A DNA stretch of 64,000 nt from Guillardia theta CCMP2712 (Eukaryota; Protista; Cryptophyta), in the NCBI RefSeq assembly GCF_000315625.1, contig NW_005434639.1, positions 195,511 to 259,510 on the forward strand, in the 5' to 3' direction. The notes below the pieces were generated by a model, which searched no databases, was not told the DNA's origin, and saw only the letters and a list, made by a program, of their open reading frames with translations. This document shows, piece after piece, positions 17,139 to 25,300 of this stretch (positions are counted from its first letter, which is position 1; every line of letters begins with the position of its first letter). Made by a program: the position numbers and the translations under genes.

Positions 17139-17640
17139 TCAAGCCGACAAGTATCTCTTTATCTCCTCGTCCTCCGCCAAGTCCGCCGCGCTCTTGTCGC
17201 CGCGGTATGTCTTCGCATGCTTGTTTGCTTTCAACCTCTCCACAAGGATCCTCACTACCTCCATGTCCCCTCGCATCGCCGCGAGCATCAGAGGAGTGTA
17301 GCGGTCCCTGCCGACAGTGAAGTTCACGTCCGGCTTGTTGGCGAACTCGCTCATCCACTCCTCCAGCCTCTGCAGGCTTCGGGTGAGAATGGCGACGAGC
17401 AGAGCTTTGCGACGCTCTTTCTCTGCATCATCGACTGTGGTTGGAGAAGCGACAGCGGATCGCATTCTTGGCCCTGCACAACCTCTCAGCAGTCAACTCT
17501 ATCCCTCACCTCTTACCTGGTGACTGAATAGCTCGAGTCAAGAGAGCATCAATCCACTCAGTCGAGTCAAAATCGTCATCGGATCCTCTCTTGAAGAGAT
17601 TAATCACATCACTGTCGTCATCGTCCGGTGCTTGTGACAT
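17139..17640 (-). CDS. Small ankyrin-repeat protein, copy A (2 exons)
   Basis: MSQAPDDDD...QSPG|PRMRS... then DVN...YTPLMLAAMRGDMEVVRILVE..AN...GDKSAADLA, which matches the ankyrin consensus. Confidence 0.8.
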
Positions 17641-18096
17641 CTCTTGGTGCTCGTTCGTGTTCCCTACCCAACGTCAGCTCTTCCTCTCACCACTACCAAC
17701 CATGGTTAGGAGAAAGCACAAAATCCTCCTCCTCCTTCCCTCTTCCCTCCCCACTTGAAAACTTTTACAGTACATTCCTTCTCTCCTCCTGCTCCCCGTC
17801 CCTCCCATTCTTTTCACATTCCATCCCTCCATTTCTCCGTTTTCTTCCGTGGGTCTCGGCCTCTCTCCCTTCCTACCTCACCCCTTCATGTTTCGTTGCT
17901 TCCTCCCGCGTTCCTCCCCTAACTACCTCCCTTTCACTAACTTCAGCCCCCACTAACAGCAGCACATCATCCAGCTCCCAGCTACTGATCCAGCACAGCT
18001 GGGCAAGAGCTATAGCCACCCCGGCCCTGGCAAGGAGCAGGGACGAGGACCAGAGTTGCCGCACAACCTCGGCATGTCTGCTGGGAAATATTCTTT

Positions 18097-18377
18097 ACTC
18101 AAAGTTAAGTTAAAAATCAGTACGAGGACAGTTAGCGGCTGCCGTTCCCTCGGATCAGTTCGGACGGGCCGGGCCTCGTCCCGGCCGGGCCGCTAGCATC
18201 CCGGGACCCAGTCCCGCGATCCCGGGCCGCGGCGCCGGCGACTTAGTAAGTTGGGCCCGGGGACAGCAGCCGGCAGGACTCCTCATTAGGTTTGGTTCTC
18301 GCTGTCTTTTCGGCCCGGGTCAAGCCTCCTCGACTCTCCTGATTGTCCTCGTACTGATTTTTAAGTCAACTTTGAGT
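18097..18377. mobile_element. MITE-like element, 281 bp, with 34-bp terminal inverted repeats
   Basis: 18097-18130 ACTCAAAGTTAAGTTAAAAATCAGTACGAGGACA matches the reverse complement of 18344-18377 at 32/34 positions. The interior is GC-rich and non-coding. No TSD is evident. Confidence 0.55.
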
Positions 18378-18500
18378 GAACGTTCAGTGCGGGTCAACGG
18401 TTGGCACTGCGCCACAACTTGACCTGCCGGAGTGTGACGGAATGAGTCAGTGTGATTGCTGCTTGCGAGGTTTCGTCAGTCTCTGCTTTATTGGCTTCGT

Positions 18501-19007
18501 TCAACCCTGAGCCGACAAGTATCTCTTTATCTCCTCGTCCTCCGCCAAGTCCGCCGCGCTCTTGTCGCCGCGGTATGTCTTCGCATGCTTGTTTGCTTTC
18601 ATCTTCTCCACAAGGATCCTCACAACCTCCATGTCCCCTCGCATCGCCGCGAGCATCAGAGGAGTGTAGCGGTCCCTGCCGACAGTGAAGTTCACGTCCG
18701 GCTTGTTGGCGAACTCGCTCATCCACTCCTCCAGCCTCTGCAGGCTTCGGGTGAGAATGGCGACGAGCAGAGCTTTGCGACGCTCTTTCTCTGCATGAGT
18801 GATGCTCGTTTTTGGTGATCTTGACGATCTTTGAACAATCCGTTCTATGACGCATGTTACTCGGGAAGCACTCAGAGCAAGGATCGATTGCAGACCTTGT
18901 CCTAGAAAGATGATATCATCAAGCACATCTCCCAAATTTTCGGGCATACGTTCCGCTTGCATTAGGAGCACTGCGATCTCCGTGACATCAGTTGAATCGT
19001 TCGCCAT
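18501..19007 (-). CDS. Small ankyrin-repeat protein, copy B
   Basis: Same ankyrin region as copy A (18510-18796 vs 17142-17428) with a different N-terminus (MANDSTDV...) and a probable 45-nt in-frame intron. Confidence 0.78.
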   Translation of the reverse strand: MANDSTDVTEIAVLLMQAERMPENLGDVLDDIIFLGQGLQSILALSASRVTCVIERIVQRSSRSPKTSITHAEKERRKALLVAILTRSLQRLEEWMSEFANKPDVNFTVGRDRYTPLMLAAMRGDMEVVRILVEKMKANKHAKTYRGDKSAADLAEDEEIKRYLSAQG

Positions 19008-19254
19008 CCCCGCTGCTTGACGCGGCAAGCTGAGACCATAAATCAGTTTGTCAGTGGTTTCCCGTAGGTTGCACAGCAAGGATGCAGACATCTTCCTTGA
19101 CTCATCACTGTTCTACTCACTAGCACGAAAGAAGAACAGGTCTAGCTCACAGAACGAGTCAGGACGGATCACATGGGTTGCTCTGGACACCAGTCCGTCT
19201 GCAAAAGGTGAATGATCTAAGTGCCTTGAATGGATCTCTGGCAGGCAGAGAGGA

Positions 19255-19393
19255 GAGGAGGGAGGTGAGTGAGTGAGTGAGTGAGGGAGGGAGGGAGGGA
19301 GTGAGTGAAGGGGGGAGGGAGGGAGGGAGTGAGTGAGTGAGGGAGGGAGGGGAGGGAGTGAAGGGGGGAGGGAGGGAGGGAGGGAGGGAGGGA
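19255..19393. repeat. (GAGG/GAGT)n compound microsatellite, intergenic
   Basis: Runs of gagt and ggga units seen directly. Confidence 0.85.
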
Positions 19394-19815
19394 GTTGAGT
19401 GTTGAGCTGGGAGGCTCTGATTTGCTGCCTTTGCTAGGAAGAGGAGGGAGGGCATATAGGGCATAGGGGTTTACTTTACTGCCCCGCGATACGATCGAGA
19501 TTGAACCTTGGGGCCGACTCTAGCCTCTTATTTACTCAGTAAAGTAGGCTTTGAACCCTTGTAAACTTTATCTGTGTTTGCGTGCTCGCCTGTTTCGGCA
19601 GTATCGCTCTCGTATGGGTCTTACCGTCCTCCTCGCAGGGGCCTTGCGCTACTGCTCTTTGTCCTGATCCTTGTTCCCCTGCTTGAGTCGTGCATGCCGT
19701 CGCCGGGCTTGCCGCGTGTTTGGAGTAGCGGTTTTCGCTGCTTCCTTCATTTCCTAGTGTTTCATTGAGGCGGGTTTGTAGGGTTTATCCTCGTCCTCCT
19801 TTGTTTACTCCACAG

Positions 19816-22004
19816 CTATATGAAGGCGTCAGGGTCGAGCCCTCCCAGCGTCGCCCTTGCGCTAATGGCCTTGTGCTGCAAGTCAACTCCGATGAAGTCT
19901 GCGGATCAAGTCAGCATGACGACGCGAACAACATAGCGGCAGGGCATCACCGAAGAAACTCTCCATGCTCCTCTCCTTGCCGACTCCGTACACGCCGTCC
20001 AGGCCCTGGCAGTGGGATCTCAGAGAGGAGGGGGAGGGATGGAGGGGAGGTTACCTGCATGGGCGAGACCTGTGCCTCCTCGAAGTCGCAGTCCCACGAG
20101 TTTCTGTTCTGGAAGAAGGAGTGCAGCTGGTAGCAGTTGTAGTGCAGACTTAGTTTGTCTGTTGCTTCCTTCGGAGGAGCTTCGGGACGAGCTCGTTGCC
20201 CCGAGGGTCCGTTCCGCACTGTCTCCTCTCCCTCCCCCATCCTCAAGATCGACCGAGCCCGCAGGAGGGATCGGGAGCGGAGGTCGAAGGGGTCGGCGAC
20301 CTCCTTGAAGCTCGACCTGTAGCTCCGATCCCAGCAGTGGAACACGACAGGGTGGCAGGGCGCGAAAACGTCGAACCCCCGCGTCCACATGCGGGCTAGC
20401 ATGGTCAGCTCCTCCCCGAAGAAGAGAAACTTCATCGAGGGATCGTAGGGAACTTCCAGCAAAAGCTCACTTGTGGAGAAGGAGCACCCAGCTGCCCAGA
20501 ACAGGCTCACCCGAGGAGCCGCCGGCCTCTGCCTCAGCATCTTCCCAGCTATCCGCAGCATGCCTTCCTCGCCGAACTGAGATGCGCACAACAGGGTGCT
20601 GGGAGACTGCTGGGGGACGGGATGGTCCCTGTCGTATCCGGGAGGATACGTGCTGAGCACTGGCTTAGGGCTCGGGCACGAGCCCAGCTGGGAGATGAGG
20701 TATTCATCCCACCCCTCAGCGAACCGCATGTGGGAGTCGATCTGGAGGTAGTACTTCTCCCCTGCCCAGAGCCTCTGTGCGAGGTACCTTGCCCAGCACG
20801 GACCTCTTGCTTCCTTCCAGTGGAACCGGGTCTCCCGCACGTTCTCCTCGCATCCTTCCGGCAGGTCACCCTCATGCAAGAAGCAGTCCTCGTCATCCTG
20901 GAAGTCGACCTGCGAGATCAGCCCCACATGCACCCTCTTGGGCAGCTTGGCTTTCTGGAACAGATCTCGCACGGTCTTGGGGCACTCGGGGTCCCTGTAG
21001 GCGACGATCGAGACGAAGATCTCCTCCGGCCTTGCCTCCTCCTCCTCTCGTCTTGCTGCGAAGGCCTGACAGCTCTCCAAGAACGAGCTGGGGCCGTACA
21101 GCCATCCTGATATGGCGAACCTCTCACTCGCGCACGGCAAGACCTCATGCTCCATGTCGGGCAGGAAGAGGAGGAGCCGATCGCACAGAGGAGCGACGTC
21201 GACGAGCCCTTCCTTGGGGTGGTACAGCCGCAGGACGCCCCCGTGCTCTTCACGCCATCCTTCCGCTACACGTCAGGCGTGAGGGGAGGCAGAACAGAGT
21301 TACCCGGGTTGAAGTAGTAGATGCAAGTCAGTCGACGACCAGCGTTGGTCTCGCTCACGTCAGAGTGCCGCACGTAGCAGGCGCCCTGCGCGTACCGGGC
21401 GAGCTGGAACGTGGCCTTCTCGCACGTGAAGGTCTGCGATAACGCGGTTACCAGGGAGTCCCGCGCACTGACGATGGAGTCTGACACTGCCTGGAGGGAG
21501 AGTGAGGGACGGAAGTCATGAAGGAGCGCACAAACCTCCATGCAGGAGATGCTCCGCGTCAGAGCCTCGTCACTCAGGTCGCCCGACAGCTTCCTCTCCA
21601 GAAGCGAGCTCATCCATATGATCTCGTCCCCTCGCGCGCGGACGTCCGTCCATGCAGTCGAGTCCTTACCCATCCCAGCTCTTCTCATCAGACCTGCTCG
21701 GAAGATGTTCTGCGCTGCCCCCCGCGCGCCTTCAGCCTGATCCCTCCCCAGGAAGCCGTCGAACACAGCGAACCCTCTCTCCCTAACCATCTTGATCGCA
21801 GACTCGGCGTCGAACGTGTTGGAAGTCGCTTCCAAGAAGCTGCGGTCTGCCTTCTCTGTTCCATCCTGGGACCCCCCTGTATCGAGAGCTCAATGGGTTC
21901 ACCTCAAGTCCAGCTCTACCTGCGAGGGACCGGAAAGTCCCGTCGTCCAGCAAGGAAAGCACCTTGAGCTGGAGGTGCTGGGGCAGCTGACCCAGCCCGC
22001 TCAT
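19816..22004 (-). CDS. Fusion protein: F-box-like motif + EGLN/PhyA-type 2OG-Fe(II) prolyl 4-hydroxylase + GT60 Gnt1-type hydroxyproline GlcNAc-transferase
   Basis: Six exons splice in frame: MSGLGQLPQHLQLKVLSLLDDGTFRSLAG|...GFAVFDGFLG...RGDEIIWM...ARY...YVRHSD...RRLTCIYYFNP|(G)WREEHGGVLRL...DRLLLF..MEHEVLP..RFAISGW, continuing in the same exon into IFVSIVAYRDPEC...GPCWARY...LQIDSHMRF..WD..VLSTYPP..LFWAAG..VPYDP..LFFGEE..RMWTRG...|GLDGVYGVGKERS|FIGVD...GGLDPDAFI*. Confidence 0.9.
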
Positions 22005-22344
22005 CCGAAACTCTTCTTCCTCTGCACCTGCTCTATGGCGTCTCAGCACGCAACATTGTTCCTCTGTCTTCTGATCTACAAGATTGCTCTCTCTTCCTCC
22101 CCCCGCCTCCCTCCCGCCCCTCACAGCATTGCTGGTCCCTGTCTCCCCGATGAAATAACGGGCGTAACGAGCGGAAAAGTCCACAAGCGGCATGCTCAGT
22201 CGGTAGTTCGCTTGACTCAGAGGCAGCAGGGGGATGAGGACTGGAAGCTCGTCCTCGTCCTCGTCCTCGTCCTCTTCCTCTTCTTCGTCCTCCGACACGT
22301 CCTCGTCCTCCGACACGTCCTCAACCTCGTCCTCCGACACCTCC

Positions 22345-25300
22345 ATGTCCACGTCCTCCACGCCCACGTCCTCCTCATCCTCGATTCTCCTCGTCCTCCT
22401 TGTCCTCTTGTTCCCCTTTTCTTCGCTATGCTCAAACACAAGCTCTTCGAGCCTCATTCCTCGAAAGTCAGGAAGCTGCATGCTGGAAGGGCGCTGCGAG
22501 AAGAACAAGCAGGAAAGGGCGCTCTACCAGGACAATGATGAAGGGCGTTTGAGGAGAAATTCTGCATGCCATGCTGAGAGCTGCGGGAGGAGAGCAAGGG
22601 ATCAGCACATTTGGTGCGAAAACCACCCCGACAACGCAGTTCACGCTCACTTCACGAGGGACAAGGTAGCAGCAACGGAGAGCTTCCCCAAGTTCCACGT
22701 TGAGAGGCGGGATGACGTGAGTGCAGACAAGATCGGCAAGAAGAGCACGAGCACGGAAGACCATGTGTCCTCTGACGAGTGCCATCCGAGCTACGAGATC
22801 GCTAACTCGTCGACATGGCTGGAGATCATGTGCGCAGACGGCAGCCAAGGATGGCAGTGGAGGGAAGACAGGGAATGTAAGGGGTTGCACCATGTGTTCT
22901 TCCAGGCGCTTGAGGACGTCTCAGTCTACTTCTGCCATGTCTCCGGCAAGACGCTCGGGTTGTCCGACGACAGCATGTACACGATCAAAGTGTTCAAGGG
23001 AAGCTTGTCGATCCTGTCGTTCTCCACTCAAGAGGATTGCGAGGTCATGCAGAAGAACGGACTGCACGTGTGGTATGGTGGCAATCCAGAAGAAATGTCG
23101 ATCAAGCCATGCGGAAGCTCCGGCGAACTGGAGGGGATCTTGAAGCAGAGGGCATGTTGTCTGCATGAAGCGTCGGAGCACGAGTACGTGTACGATCGCA
23201 GAATAGAGAGCAGCGGCAGTCGGATGAACTTCACATGGAGGGCATGCCTGTTTGAATGCCAACAGGACAGAGACACCTCAAGTCTCGATCGCTCAAGTTT
23301 GGTTCAGAGGTCGTTCGTGGAGACGCTGGACGACATAACCGACAGGATAACCGACGGCATGTCCGGTGCTTACCTGAGATTCCTGCCAGAGGATGTGTGG
23401 GAGGCTTATCAAGGTCTTTGCTAATCAGAAGTTGTCGGGCTAATTTTCTTTTCAGTATCGTTGGAGTCAGGAGGTCGGAATGACAGCCGGGCGGAATTTT
23501 TCCGCGAGTATGCTCAATCGCTCTTACTGACGGGTGCGACAGACAGCGTCCCCCGGACACGTCCCTAACGATGTGCTCTGTAGGAGAGGGGATCATGAAG
23601 GCCGTTCCTGGCTTCGACTCGTCTTGGAAGTGCCTCTGTCCTCCCAACAGGCTTTTCGAACGATTGCCGCTGCCAAAATGCTGCCGTCTGCCCTCCTTGG
23701 GAGATGTCAAGTTTGCATCTGCTCAGGAACATGCATAGGACGCTACTGTGCTCGTGCTGATAGGTTTGGAGCAGGCGGAAGAGACGTTGGCCATGATTCA
23801 GTCTATATCTCTTGGACAGAGGGCTGCCGACACAGGAGAGATCACTCACGACTTCCAGTATGCCTTCCACGCGATGGGAGCAGCTGCGATATTTGACGAC
23901 GACCGTCTTATGCGATTCTTGTGCTTCGTGCGGCAACGAGGTCCCAGCTTGTTCATCGGCCCTCCGGATGTGCAATTGTACATTAAGCACCTCCTCGTGG
24001 GCCCGGGTTGTACCTTCCTTCCGATCCAGCGAGGTGACGTCATCAACTCTCAAACTCTAGCCGACATCCACCAAGAGGCCATGCGGGTGCTGATGCTGAA
24101 GTCCAAGGACAGCGGGAGCGAGCTGAGGGCGCAGGTGGTGGTCATTCATGCAGGGTCTGCGACCCCAGTCCTGCAGAAGCGAATCTTGTCGTCTAGTCAG
24201 GCTGCACAGCTCAAGGTCTTCTCCATCGACTTGAGCGAGATGGTTCAAACCTTAGGGTTCGACAACCTGGACCTGGACACCTCTGGAGCTGGCTTCTCCT
24301 CCTCCTCCTCCTCCCTGGTGCAAGAGACAGGGATCAAGTCCCAGGACCTCCTCAACCAACTCTCCATCGCTACCAAGACCCGCCGAAAGATTCGTTTCCT
24401 CGTCACCACGGCGCTGGTCACTGGGGAGGATGACAGGTGGAGCCGGCAGGAGCTGTACAGGGGGACGTTCAAAGCTCTTGCTCGCCTCGGGTATCCCGAT
24501 CCTCTAATAGTCGAGGCCGTTCATGGAGGGGAGTCTCGGAGCTTCTTAGAAGGCTATGGGCACGTGGTCTACACCGACCTCAACGACTTTGAGAACCAGG
24601 GCAACAACGAGGGCAGGTCGATGCTGCTGGCGCTTCAGACTTGGGATGTGAAAGATGATGTGATGGTGAGCGGAAGCAATCAAGATGCTTTTCTTTTCTC
24701 CTTTCTCCTCCGCCTTCTCTCCCCCTCCATCCTCCTTCGCTTCTTCCGAACTTCCTGCTCGCTGCTCACTCTTTCCCCTTCCTGTCCTCCTCCCCATGCT
24801 CCCACTCTCCTCCCTGACAGAGGAACTAGGTCATCAAGCTCACGGGTCGATACTCCCCCGCTGATCGCAGACTCGTTCAGGTTCATCGTGACGCTCTTGT
24901 GCATGCACGTTGACCCGTCGTCTTCCGTAGCTCGTGGAGCTCAACACCCATCAGGACGCGATCGTCAGGGTCCGCAACGTCTCAAGAAGCGATCCTAACT
25001 TTGACTCCTAAGTCCAGGTCTCCATGAACGACGGGTTGATGTTCACCGGCTGCTTTGCGATGAGGAAAGGGCTCCTGCAGGAGGCTCTCAGCGCGATGGA
25101 CTGGAACCAATACGAGTAGTCCAGCTCCTCCTCCCACCAGCCGATGCTAACCACTTGTCTCCTACAGATCGCACGGAGTTCATCTTGAGTGGGCGATGTG
25201 ATCGTTTTCTCTCCCGTTCCGACGGTCCTCCTGACTTGTCAACAGGGTCCACAGACTCCGTCAGATCTGCGAACCGGACGATTGGCTGCTCGAGAGGACA

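What the first reader, a model, noticed from the sequence alone, without database searches (positions are those of the whole stretch)
21920..22004. Truncated F-box-like motif at the N-terminus of the hydroxylase-GT fusion: a built-in Skp1 docking arm?
Seen: exon 1 encodes MSGLGQLPQHLQLKVLSLLDDGTFRSLAG and splices (G|gtagag...acag|GG) exactly in frame to the hydroxylase. It fits the F-box consensus L..LP..L...(I/V)LS.LD....l..la for helices 1-2 but lacks the V(C/S)(K/R).W third helix. Known: F-boxes bind Skp1, and the hydroxylated Pro lies in Skp1's C-terminal F-box-binding region. Inference: the enzyme mimics an F-box protein to capture free Skp1, and the missing third helix may leave the Pro-bearing segment exposed. 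Alternatively it makes the enzyme an SCF client or competitor. I know of no described F-box-PhyA-Gnt1 architecture.
Basis: partly seen in the sequence, partly recalled or inferred. Interest (0 to 1): 0.85.

Follow-up and report, generated by a model that had tools for sequence, protein, structure and literature searches.

The report
Half F-box arm on Skp1 enzyme
The first exon of a Guillardia theta gene for the enzyme that hydroxylates and glycosylates Skp1 encodes a short, strongly conserved "Leu-Pro plus one helix" motif that looks like the first third of an F-box and may be a built-in handle for grabbing Skp1, though binding is not yet shown.

Summary
Window 22004-21920 (minus strand) is a transcribed first coding exon. 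Spliced contigs from two independent studies join 21920 to 21876 exactly, in frame with a PhyA-Gnt1 fusion of Guillardia theta (651 aa). The public model misses this exon.

The motif is not chance. The pattern L-P-x-x-[LV]-x-x-x-[IV]-L-S-hydrophobic-hydrophobic sits at the extreme N-terminus of about 45 PhyA(-Gnt1) proteins, from cryptophyte-like metagenomic relatives, green algae, brown algae, a pelagophyte, chytrid fungi and an amoebozoan. In the closest relatives it is 86% identical, against about 46% for the hydroxylase domain and about 25% for the linker.

It is not an F-box domain. Pfam scores are sub-threshold (11.7-15.2 bits) and always cover only profile positions 1-20. Helices 2 and 3 are absent. 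A profile-profile comparison with Guillardia's own F-boxes aligns it in register (score 14.8; 0 of 398 column shuffles reach it).

An AlphaFold2 model of an ortholog shows a low-confidence helix on a disordered tether of 34-77 residues.

My best reading, at about 50%, is a hemi-F-box docking arm for free Skp1. Binding is untested. I found no description of it in the searchable literature.

The parts
22005..22091 (-). 5' UTR, minimum extent
   Evidence: The spliced contig of run X2 reaches 22091 and that of X1 reaches 22034. There is no in-frame ATG upstream of 22004 in this stretch.
22033..22056 (-). 7-codon upstream ORF (MLRAETP, then stop) in the 5' UTR
   Evidence: Read directly from the sequence. 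It is included only in the longer X2 contig.
21920..22004 (-). Coding part of exon 1: 28 codons plus 1 base. This is the N-terminal arm.
   Evidence: Junction 21920|21876 is present in contigs of X1 and X2.
21948..21986 (-). Core motif, residues L7-L19 (LPQHLQLKVLSLL): Leu-Pro plus an amphipathic helix
   Evidence: Pro is invariant, and L7 and L16 are at least 90% conserved in 23 N-termini. Consensus from 54 regex matches. Pfam F-box-like positions 2-20. hhalign is in register with Guillardia F-boxes.
21933..21998 (-). Extended block, residues G3-F24, nearly identical in the closest relatives
   Evidence: 19 of 22 residues are identical to P0229, P0230 and P0234. By comparison, 87-91 of 195 are identical in the hydroxylase domain and 7-9 of 31 in the linker.
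21877..21919 (-). Intron 1 (43 nt, GT..AG)
21536..21876 (-). Exon 2: poorly conserved linker (about residues 29-55), then the start of the PhyA 2OG-oxygenase domain
   Evidence: DdPhyA structure 6t8m aligns from FDAES... onward.
21304..21490 (-). Exon 3: PhyA domain containing the HSD iron-binding motif. Intron 2 is 21491-21535.
   Evidence: Pfam PF13640.
20055..21259 (-). Exon 4: end of the PhyA domain (second His, Arg) and the Gnt1 GlcNAc-transferase domain. Intron 3 is 21260-21303.
   Evidence: PF11397 at E 1.8e-68, 232 bits..
19816..20005 (-). Exons 5 (19951-20005) and 6 (coding 19816-19898, including the stop), with introns 20006-20054 and 19899-19950. This is the C-terminal tail of Gnt1.
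   Evidence: The C-terminus ...GVDLQHK...GGLDPDAFI matches ortholog C-termini.

Best explanation
Exon 1 encodes a conserved N-terminal 'hemi-F-box': the Leu-Pro dipeptide and helix 1 of an F-box, without helices 2 and 3. A flexible, non-conserved linker of 34-77 residues tethers it to a bifunctional Skp1 prolyl-4-hydroxylase / GlcNAc-transferase (PhyA-Gnt1). Shown here: the exon is expressed and spliced; the motif is under stronger constraint than the catalytic domain; it is ancient and widespread; it matches the F-box start in register; and it is modelled as a low-confidence helix that does not pack onto the enzyme body. Inferred: the helix docks into F-box subsite 1 of free Skp1 (helices 5-7). 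That would leave the disordered C-terminal segment, which carries the target Pro at the start of helix 8, free to enter first the PhyA and then the Gnt1 active site. The arm would thereby raise the local substrate concentration, allow both steps without release, and restrict the enzyme to Skp1 not occupied by an F-box protein.
For: Expression and splicing are shown, and the gene model. Conservation: the motif is at the extreme N-terminus in 23 aligned orthologs, with Pro invariant. A loose pattern has 55 matches starting in the first 30 residues of 378 session proteins, against 6.5 expected from its rate elsewhere. Most of the 54 proteins carrying such a match, about 45, are PhyA-type proteins; the rest are unrelated chance matches. 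Named carriers are Bryopsis, Coccomyxa, Chlamydomonas eustigma, Tetraselmis, Volvox, Ascophyllum, Pylaiella, Laminaria and Chrysophaeum, plus Spizellomyces, Borealophlyctis (chytrids) and Soliformovum (Amoebozoa). In the nearest relatives the motif is 19/22 identical, against 87-91/195 in the hydroxylase and 7-9/31 in the linker. F-box likeness: the top Pfam hit is F-box-like or F-box for Guillardia and for 4 of 10 further orthologs, always on profile positions 1-20. hhalign against 15 Guillardia F-boxes aligns arm 5-23 to F-box columns 12-30, score 14.8, P 0.0034. The score is reached by 0 of 199 shuffles of F-box columns and 0 of 199 shuffles of arm columns. The control against Skp1 gives P 0.34. 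Tether: the AF2 model of ortholog P0045 has helix 10-20 at pLDDT about 46-54, residues 22-38 below 50, and catalytic domains above 90. Linker length ranges from 34 to 77 residues. Context: Guillardia Skp1 keeps the NDFTPEEE target site. Skp1 recognition by PhyA has determinants outside the active site, and Km for Skp1 is 202-350 uM for the arm-less or uncharacterised Dd/Tg enzymes (PMC7864055). Skp1 bound to an F-box protein is recalcitrant to PHYa, and the Hyp site is at the N-terminus of helix 8, next to subsite 1 (PMC13278062). A minimal LPxx(L/I) F-box-like motif suffices for SKP1 interaction in polerovirus P0 and is lost with LP->AA (PMC6593998).
Against: No binding evidence exists. All Pfam scores are below the gathering cut-offs (11.7-15.2 bits against 20.5 and 24.3), and 22 of the 26 orthologs plus 6 of 10 gave no F-box hit at all. 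The hhalign probability is only 9.6%. Canonical F-boxes use three helices to hold Skp1 (established knowledge). Some fusions start directly at the hydroxylase domain without the arm (P0013, P0035, P0046, P0054, P0059, P0068, P0092), and a dictyostelid-like standalone PhyA (P0274) lacks it. So it is dispensable for catalysis as such. Oomycete (LSPQLQALVEASLG) and diatom (ASNLILSFLA) versions deviate in register or lack Leu-Pro. A Leu-rich amphipathic helix could serve other partners.
Confidence: 0.5

Rival explanations
1. The conserved amphipathic helix serves another purpose. It could be an intramolecular or dimerisation contact, an export or localisation signal, or a handle for a different partner such as another Skp1/Elongin-C-fold protein. 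In that case the F-box likeness is convergent.
For: The similarity covers only about 19 residues, and all Pfam scores are sub-threshold. Hydrophobic spacing at i, i+4, i+8 is common to many helical motifs. Oomycete and diatom variants lose the Leu-Pro register. No binding data exist.
Against: Pro is invariant and Leu-Pro directly precedes the helix, which is the F-box hallmark. The in-register profile match exceeds all 398 shuffles. The AF2 model does not pack the helix onto the enzyme (pLDDT about 50 against more than 90 for the body), which argues against a fixed cis contact. The enzyme's only known substrate is the F-box receptor Skp1.
Confidence: 0.3
2. The motif is a functional, though degenerate, F-box that puts the enzyme into SCF complexes as a substrate receptor or as an SCF client. 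In this reading it controls enzyme turnover or recruits targets rather than presenting Skp1 as substrate.
For: The N-terminal position is typical of F-box proteins. A 2OG dioxygenase with an N-terminal F-box-like sequence (JcdI/FBXO13) is a stable, direct Skp1 partner in Dictyostelium and Toxoplasma (PMC9485057, PMC11570480). F-box sequences in protists are very degenerate (PMC9485057).
Against: Helices 2 and 3 and the conserved Trp are absent, and the following 30-70 residues are unconserved and predicted disordered. Stable Skp1 capture in the F-box mode would cover the region that PhyA must reach, because FBP-bound Skp1 is recalcitrant to PHYa (PMC13278062).
Confidence: 0.12
3. It is a chance resemblance in a non-functional or mis-predicted leader.
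For: The Pfam E-value of 0.16 for a 28-residue peptide is not significant on its own. The public annotation omits the exon.
Against: RNA contigs from two studies splice it in frame. It is 86% identical in relatives whose catalytic domain is about 46% identical. It is present in five eukaryotic supergroup-level lineages.
Confidence: 0.02

Closest known systems
Canonical F-box domain (Pfam PF00646 / PF12937; about 45 residues, three helices)
   Same: N-terminal position. Leu-Pro is followed by a helix with hydrophobic residues at motif positions 5, 9, 10 and 13. It aligns in register with Guillardia's own F-boxes.
   Different: Only the first 19-20 profile positions are present. Helices 2 and 3 and the V-C/S-K/R-x-W signature are missing. 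Scores are below the Pfam cut-offs.
[quoted passage not shown]
   Same: A short LPxx(L/I) element outside a recognisable F-box domain. In P0 it is required for SKP1 interaction and is lost with LP->AA (PMC6593998). It shows that sub-domain F-box-like motifs can engage Skp1.
   Different: P0 is a viral protein and its motif is internal, with a downstream Pro that Guillardia lacks. P0 is not a Skp1-modifying enzyme, and P0 is thought to use SKP1 for its own stability or for hijacking.
JcdI / FBXO13, a JmjC 2OG dioxygenase with an N-terminal F-box-like sequence
   Same: A non-haem Fe/2OG oxygenase carrying an N-terminal F-box-like element that binds Skp1 directly. It is conserved across protists (PMC9485057, PMC11570480).
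   Different: JcdI is treated as an F-box protein, a stable Skp1 partner with three predicted helices. Skp1 is not its substrate. Here the enzyme's substrate is Skp1 itself, and only helix 1 is present.
GAT1 (Toxoplasma) and AgtA (Dictyostelium), the terminal Skp1 glycosyltransferases with non-enzymatic Skp1 binding
   Same: They are enzymes of the same pathway that hold Skp1 through surfaces overlapping the F-box and homodimer interface, beyond what catalysis needs (PMC13278062).
   Different: Binding there is through the folded catalytic dimer (GAT1) or a WD40 domain (AgtA), not through a tethered F-box-like helix. They are last-step enzymes, whereas PhyA-Gnt1 performs the first two steps.
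Standalone Skp1 prolyl hydroxylases DdPhyA and TgPhyA
   Same: The catalytic domain is homologous: 6t8m is the best solved match, E 7.2e-8. The Skp1 target Pro is the same.
   Different: They are separate from Gnt1. DdPhyA was crystallised without residues 1-59, and no N-terminal docking motif is discussed (PMC7864055). A dictyostelid-like representative (P0274) has no Leu-Pro arm.

Membership tests
F-box domain (PF00646 / PF12937) | Score at or above Pfam's gathering cut-off | tested here: not met
   Guillardia exon 1 scores 12.2 bits against 24.3. The best ortholog, Spizellomyces P0266, scores 15.2 against 24.3 and 13.3 against 20.5. None of the 26 orthologs gave any F-box hit.
F-box domain (PF00646 / PF12937) | Leu-Pro followed by helix 1 with the conserved hydrophobic pattern | tested here: met
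   The Pfam alignment covers profile positions 2-20. hhalign is in register, score 14.8, with 0 of 398 shuffles reaching it. Column counts: L 47/54, P 54/54, I/V/L 54/54 at position 9, L 42/54 at position 10 (Pro and the residue classes at positions 1, 5, 9 and 10 were required by the search pattern, so these counts include some circularity).
F-box domain (PF00646 / PF12937) | Helices 2 and 3, including the V-C/S-K/R-x-W signature | tested here: not met
   Matches stop at profile position 20 of 47 and F-box column 30 of 68. Residues 25-55 are only 23-29% identical in the nearest relatives. They are predicted disordered in the ortholog model.
F-box domain (PF00646 / PF12937) | Direct binding to Skp1 | not testable with these tools
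   This needs a binding assay or a validated complex model.
[quoted passage not shown] | LPxx(L/I) with a Pro 10-13 residues downstream | tested here: not met
   LPQHL is present, but residues 22-25 (G, T, F, R) contain no Pro. The consensus is taken from PMC6593998.
Skp1 prolyl 4-hydroxylase PhyA (PHD-type 2OG/Fe(II) oxygenase) | 2OG-Fe(II) oxygenase domain with HxD...H and the 2OG-binding Arg | tested here: met
   PF13640 at E 6.2e-5 on the partial ORF. PF13640 and PF13661 are precomputed for P0001. The best solved match is DdPhyA 6t8m at E 7.2e-8. RHSD, EHEV and RFAISGW are present in the spliced protein. The H, D, H and R columns are invariant in 50 fusions.
Skp1 prolyl 4-hydroxylase PhyA (PHD-type 2OG/Fe(II) oxygenase) | A Skp1 with the target Pro in the same genome | tested here: met
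   Skp1 lies on G000 contig 5 with ...IPNDFTPEEEEEV.... The transcript-derived P0121 is identical except for one residue and the 5' exon.
Gnt1 Skp1-HyPro GlcNAc-transferase (PF11397) | Score over the Pfam cut-off, fused downstream of PhyA | tested here: met
   232 bits against a cut-off of 21, E 1.8e-68. Homologs are named '[Skp1-protein]-hydroxyproline N-acetylglucosaminyltransferase' by their sources.

The most novel reading that the evidence does not exclude
The arm is an ancestral partner-mimicking docking element. It would be a single F-box helix, retained since early eukaryote evolution in cryptophytes, green algae, stramenopiles, chytrid fungi and an amoebozoan. It would let the oxygen-sensing PhyA-Gnt1 enzyme sit in the F-box groove of free Skp1, carry out hydroxylation and GlcNAc addition processively on the tethered C-terminal tail, and compete with F-box proteins and the Skp1 homodimer. 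That would couple O2 sensing directly to the pool of assembly-competent Skp1.
Probability: 0.4. Interest if true: 0.85.

Novelty: new variant of a known kind. Interest (0 to 1): 0.68.

Why it matters
How the Skp1 prolyl hydroxylase recognises a folded protein substrate is an open question. Peptides are poor substrates, determinants lie outside the active site, and Km values for the model enzymes are in the hundreds of micromolar (PMC7864055). A conserved F-box-helix-1 arm on the enzyme gives a concrete, cheaply testable answer through peptide binding, LP->AA and arm deletion. It would also explain why hydroxylase and first glycosyltransferase are so often fused, and why only F-box-free Skp1 is modified. 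It adds a new use of the F-box element, as a substrate-capture handle on the enzyme that modifies Skp1 rather than as an SCF receptor module. Its presence in chytrid fungi and an amoebozoan as well as in algae suggests that it is ancient and was lost in the two model organisms where the pathway has been studied. That loss would explain why it has been overlooked. Practically, the public Guillardia gene model needs correcting.

Tried and rejected
(1) Complex prediction. The chains were cryptophyte Skp1 P0121 (168 aa) and the 30-residue arm from window:21915-22004:-, in which 29 of 30 residues are native and the last comes from intron read-through. ipSAE was 0.25 and 0.25, under the 0.34 mark, and the controls were not run. 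This is no verdict, and I count it neither for nor against binding.

(2) The search for standalone PhyA N-termini with the search for homologous proteins returned only two fragments. The representative search gave many C-terminally cut fragments, so I could not settle whether the arm occurs on truly standalone PhyA. The Dictyostelium and Toxoplasma N-termini were not obtainable: Figure S1 of PMC7864055 is an image.

(3) Raw RNA reads of X19 gave no coverage of the gene at the 6% sampled. Expression therefore rests on spliced contigs of X1-X3.

(4) The arm profile searched against the whole Guillardia genome found only itself plus one weak hit at E 0.15. There is no second copy and no spill-over onto F-box genes.

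(5) The search of earlier findings returned nothing for this place.

(6) Literature: no paper in the searchable library mentions an F-box-like motif on PhyA or Gnt1. The key older papers PMC2873859, PMC4813455 and PMC3408163 are not held, so prior mention there cannot be excluded.

(7) I considered an upstream extension of the ORF, which is open to 22523. I rejected it because transcripts end at 22034-22091 and the upstream stretch is the antisense of the divergent neighbour's poly-Ser 5' region.
Full report
ORGANISM AND GENE MODEL

The window is from Guillardia theta CCMP2712. The glycosyltransferase ORF is 100% identical to GUITHDRAFT_71355 (P0001, 599 aa).

The feature lies on the minus strand. 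Reading 22004 down to 21920 gives ATG plus 27 codons plus one base: MSGLGQLPQHLQLKVLSLLDDGTFRSLA, then G. A 43-nt GT..AG intron follows (21919-21877). The next exon starts GG, so a Gly codon is completed and the frame continues into the hydroxylase ORF.

TRANSCRIPTION AND SPLICING

I laid four public runs on 19500-23500. Contigs of X1, X2 and X3 lack all five short introns of the gene:
- 21919-21877
- 21535-21491
- 21303-21260
- 20054-20006
- 19950-19899

They are therefore spliced transcripts. The exon 1 / exon 2 junction is present in X1 and X2, which belong to different studies. The X3 contig stops at 21879. The X2 contig ends at 22091 and the X1 contig at 22034, with no further upstream exon.

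ATG 22004 is the first in-frame ATG. A 7-codon uORF starts at 22056. A divergent plus-strand transcript begins at about 22257, so the long open frame upstream of the ATG is only the antisense of that gene's poly-Ser region.

The RNA-supported protein has 651 residues. The public model P0001 differs in three ways. It starts at an internal Met (MVRERGF) and so lacks 57 N-terminal residues. It keeps the in-frame 45-nt intron 2. It reads through the last two introns.

THE MOTIF IS NOT CHANCE

The N-termini of PhyA-Gnt1 fusions returned by the protein searches carry the same element at the very start of the protein. The pattern is L-P-x-x-[LV]-[QK]-x-[KR]-[IV]-L-S-[FLM]-[LV], usually followed by Gly, Asp or Ser. 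In a 23-sequence alignment Pro is invariant, and Leu-1 and Leu-10 of the motif are at least 90% conserved.

A loose pattern starts in the first 30 residues 55 times among 378 session proteins, against 6.5 expected from its frequency elsewhere in the same proteins. The 54 proteins with such a match include about 45 PhyA-type proteins and a few unrelated chance matches.

Named carriers:
- Green algae: Bryopsis, Coccomyxa, Chlamydomonas eustigma, Tetraselmis, Volvox.
- Brown algae: Ascophyllum, Pylaiella, Laminaria.
- A pelagophyte: Chrysophaeum.
- Chytrid fungi: Spizellomyces punctatus and 'palustris', Borealophlyctis.
- An amoebozoan: Soliformovum irregulare.

Oomycetes (LSPQLQALVEASLG) and diatoms (ASNLILSFLA) have divergent versions whose homology is uncertain.

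The closest relatives are metagenomic fragments P0229, P0230, P0231 and P0234. I take them to be cryptophyte-like from similarity only. They read M.GLGGLPQHLQLKVLSMLDDGAF. That is 19 of 22 residues identical to Guillardia over residues 3-24. The linker (residues 25-55) is 7-9 of 31 identical, and the hydroxylase domain 87-91 of 195. The arm is therefore the most constrained part of the N-terminal half, and the linker the least.

In Guillardia the arm occurs only in this gene.

IS IT AN F-BOX?

By family criteria it is not. The Guillardia exon scores 12.2 bits on PF12937 against a cut-off of 24.3, at E 0.16. None of the 26 orthologs in a first scan hit any F-box family. In a second set of 10, four gave F-box-like or F-box as the top hit at E 0.018-0.23 (11.7-15.2 bits), and one also hit PRANC. 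The match always covered profile positions 1-20 only.

I built a profile of 15 genuine Guillardia F-boxes found in the genome. hhalign places arm positions 5-23 on F-box columns 12-30, which are Leu-Pro, helix 1 and the turn. The score is 14.8, P 0.0034, probability 9.6%. The same arm profile against Skp1 gives P 0.34 over one column.

Column shuffles give an empirical null. Shuffling F-box columns gives mean 5.9, sd 1.4, max 13.0. Shuffling arm columns gives mean 5.5, sd 1.3, max 11.9. None of the 398 shuffles reaches 14.8.

So the likeness to the first third of an F-box is specific and in register, but nothing corresponds to helices 2 and 3.

ARCHITECTURE

The distance from the motif to the first strand-helix of the hydroxylase domain varies from 34 to 77 residues, median 48.5.

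I ran an AlphaFold2 model of a complete ortholog with a near-identical motif (P0045, 638 aa, with a 50-sequence alignment). It gives helix 10-20 with block pLDDT 46-54 and residues 22-38 below 50, while both catalytic domains are mostly above 90. The model does not pack the helix confidently against the enzyme. This fits a tethered, conditionally folded binding helix better than a structural element, but the argument is weak.

CONTEXT

The hydroxylase part has the HxD...H and Arg residues, and its best solved relative is Dictyostelium PhyA (6t8m, E 7.2e-8). The transferase part is PF11397 at 232 bits.

Guillardia encodes a Skp1 with the target site ...NDFTPEEE....

From the literature:
- PhyA acts on full-length Skp1 with Km of 202-350 uM, and recognition determinants lie outside the active site. 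DdPhyA was crystallised without residues 1-59, and no docking motif is discussed (PMC7864055).
- Skp1 helices 5-7 form F-box subsite 1 and helix 8 forms subsite 2. The Hyp lies at the N-terminus of helix 8.
- Skp1 bound to F-box proteins, GAT1 or AgtA is recalcitrant to PHYa.
- The terminal glycosyltransferases bind Skp1 non-enzymatically (last three points from PMC13278062).
- A JmjC dioxygenase with an N-terminal F-box-like sequence binds Skp1 directly (PMC9485057, PMC11570480).
- A minimal LPxx(L/I) motif in polerovirus P0 is required for SKP1 binding and is abolished by LP->AA (PMC6593998).

MECHANISM

I commit to the docking-arm reading at about 50%. The Leu-Pro helix would occupy subsite 1 of free Skp1. 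The missing helices 2 and 3 would leave helix 7/8 and the Pro-bearing tail free. The flexible tether would then let the tail visit the PhyA site and afterwards the Gnt1 site.

The shown steps are expression, conservation, in-register F-box likeness, the tether, and the presence of the substrate. The inferred steps are binding to Skp1, the binding site, and processivity.

Some fusions lack the arm (P0013, P0035, P0046, P0054, P0059, P0068, P0092), as does a dictyostelid-like standalone PhyA (P0274). The arm is therefore an accessory and not a catalytic requirement.

The rivals are:
- another partner or role for the helix (0.30);
- a degenerate but true F-box that makes the enzyme an SCF component or client (0.12);
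- chance (0.02, effectively refuted).

NOVELTY

The PhyA-Gnt1 fusion is widespread and already named by sources. From memory, it was noted by the West laboratory; I could not read those papers here. No precomputed Pfam listing shows an F-box on any of about 60 fusions. No paper in the searchable library mentions an F-box-like motif on PhyA or Gnt1. Three older key papers are not held, so prior mention cannot be excluded.

I rate it a new variant of a known kind: an F-box-like minimal motif used on the enzyme that modifies Skp1.

LIMITS

The one complex-prediction job gave no verdict and is listed only under Tried and rejected. The taxonomic label 'cryptophyte-like' for P0229-P0234 is inferred.

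Noticed in passing
window 19816-22004 (-): The public model GUITHDRAFT_71355 (P0001, 599 aa) disagrees with the spliced RNA contigs. It misses exon 1 (57 N-terminal residues), retains the in-frame 45-nt intron 21491-21535, and reads through introns 20006-20054 and 19899-19950, which gives a wrong C-terminus. The RNA-supported protein is 651 aa.
   Followed up: yes
window 17139-17465 (-) and 18501-19091 (-): Two tandem ORFs share a C-terminal 107-residue block that is 90% identical (AEKERRKALLVAILTRSLQRLEEW...DRYTPLMLAAMRGDMEVV..., ankyrin-like). This looks like a recent local duplication just downstream of the PhyA-Gnt1 gene.
   Followed up: partly
window 18094-18135 and 18339-18380: A 42-nt inverted repeat, 88% complementary, flanks 203 nt of GC-rich, partly palindromic sequence between the two duplicated ORFs. 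It looks like a small MITE-type insertion. I did not search for other copies.
   Followed up: partly
window 22257-23454 (+): A divergent neighbour gene is transcribed from about 22257. It has an acidic/poly-Ser-coding GAC/GAG-rich 5' region that attracts huge unrelated read depth (bin 22180-22313) and a 42-nt intron at about 23412-23453. Its product has no significant Pfam hit. The intergenic promoter region shared with PhyA-Gnt1 is only about 165 bp.
   Followed up: partly
window 22033-22056 (-): A 7-codon uORF (MLRAETP) lies in the 5' UTR of the PhyA-Gnt1 transcript. It is present in the longer X2 contig but not in the X1 contig, which starts at 22034.
   Followed up: no
window 19240-19420 (-): A long CCCT/CTCA-type low-complexity tract (ccctccctcc..., ctcactcactc...) lies downstream of the PhyA-Gnt1 stop codon, in the 3' UTR or intergenic region.
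   Followed up: no
L001 (G000 contig 5: 994160-997291) and L002/L003 (contig 10): The Guillardia Skp1 gene is split by short introns, including a 48-nt one inside the acidic loop. No database protein was 100% identical to the query exon. The transcript-derived P0121 differs from the genomic coding sequence by one residue and the 5' exon. A second, more divergent Skp1-like locus lies on contig 10.
   Followed up: partly
P0003 (ortholog, residues 1-25): A Gnt1-only relative with a long N-terminal extension starts MSLESCCPELLLREMPDL..., which loosely recalls the same Pro-plus-Leu-rich helix. It is not conserved in its neighbours P0004 and P0005, so it is probably chance.
   Followed up: no
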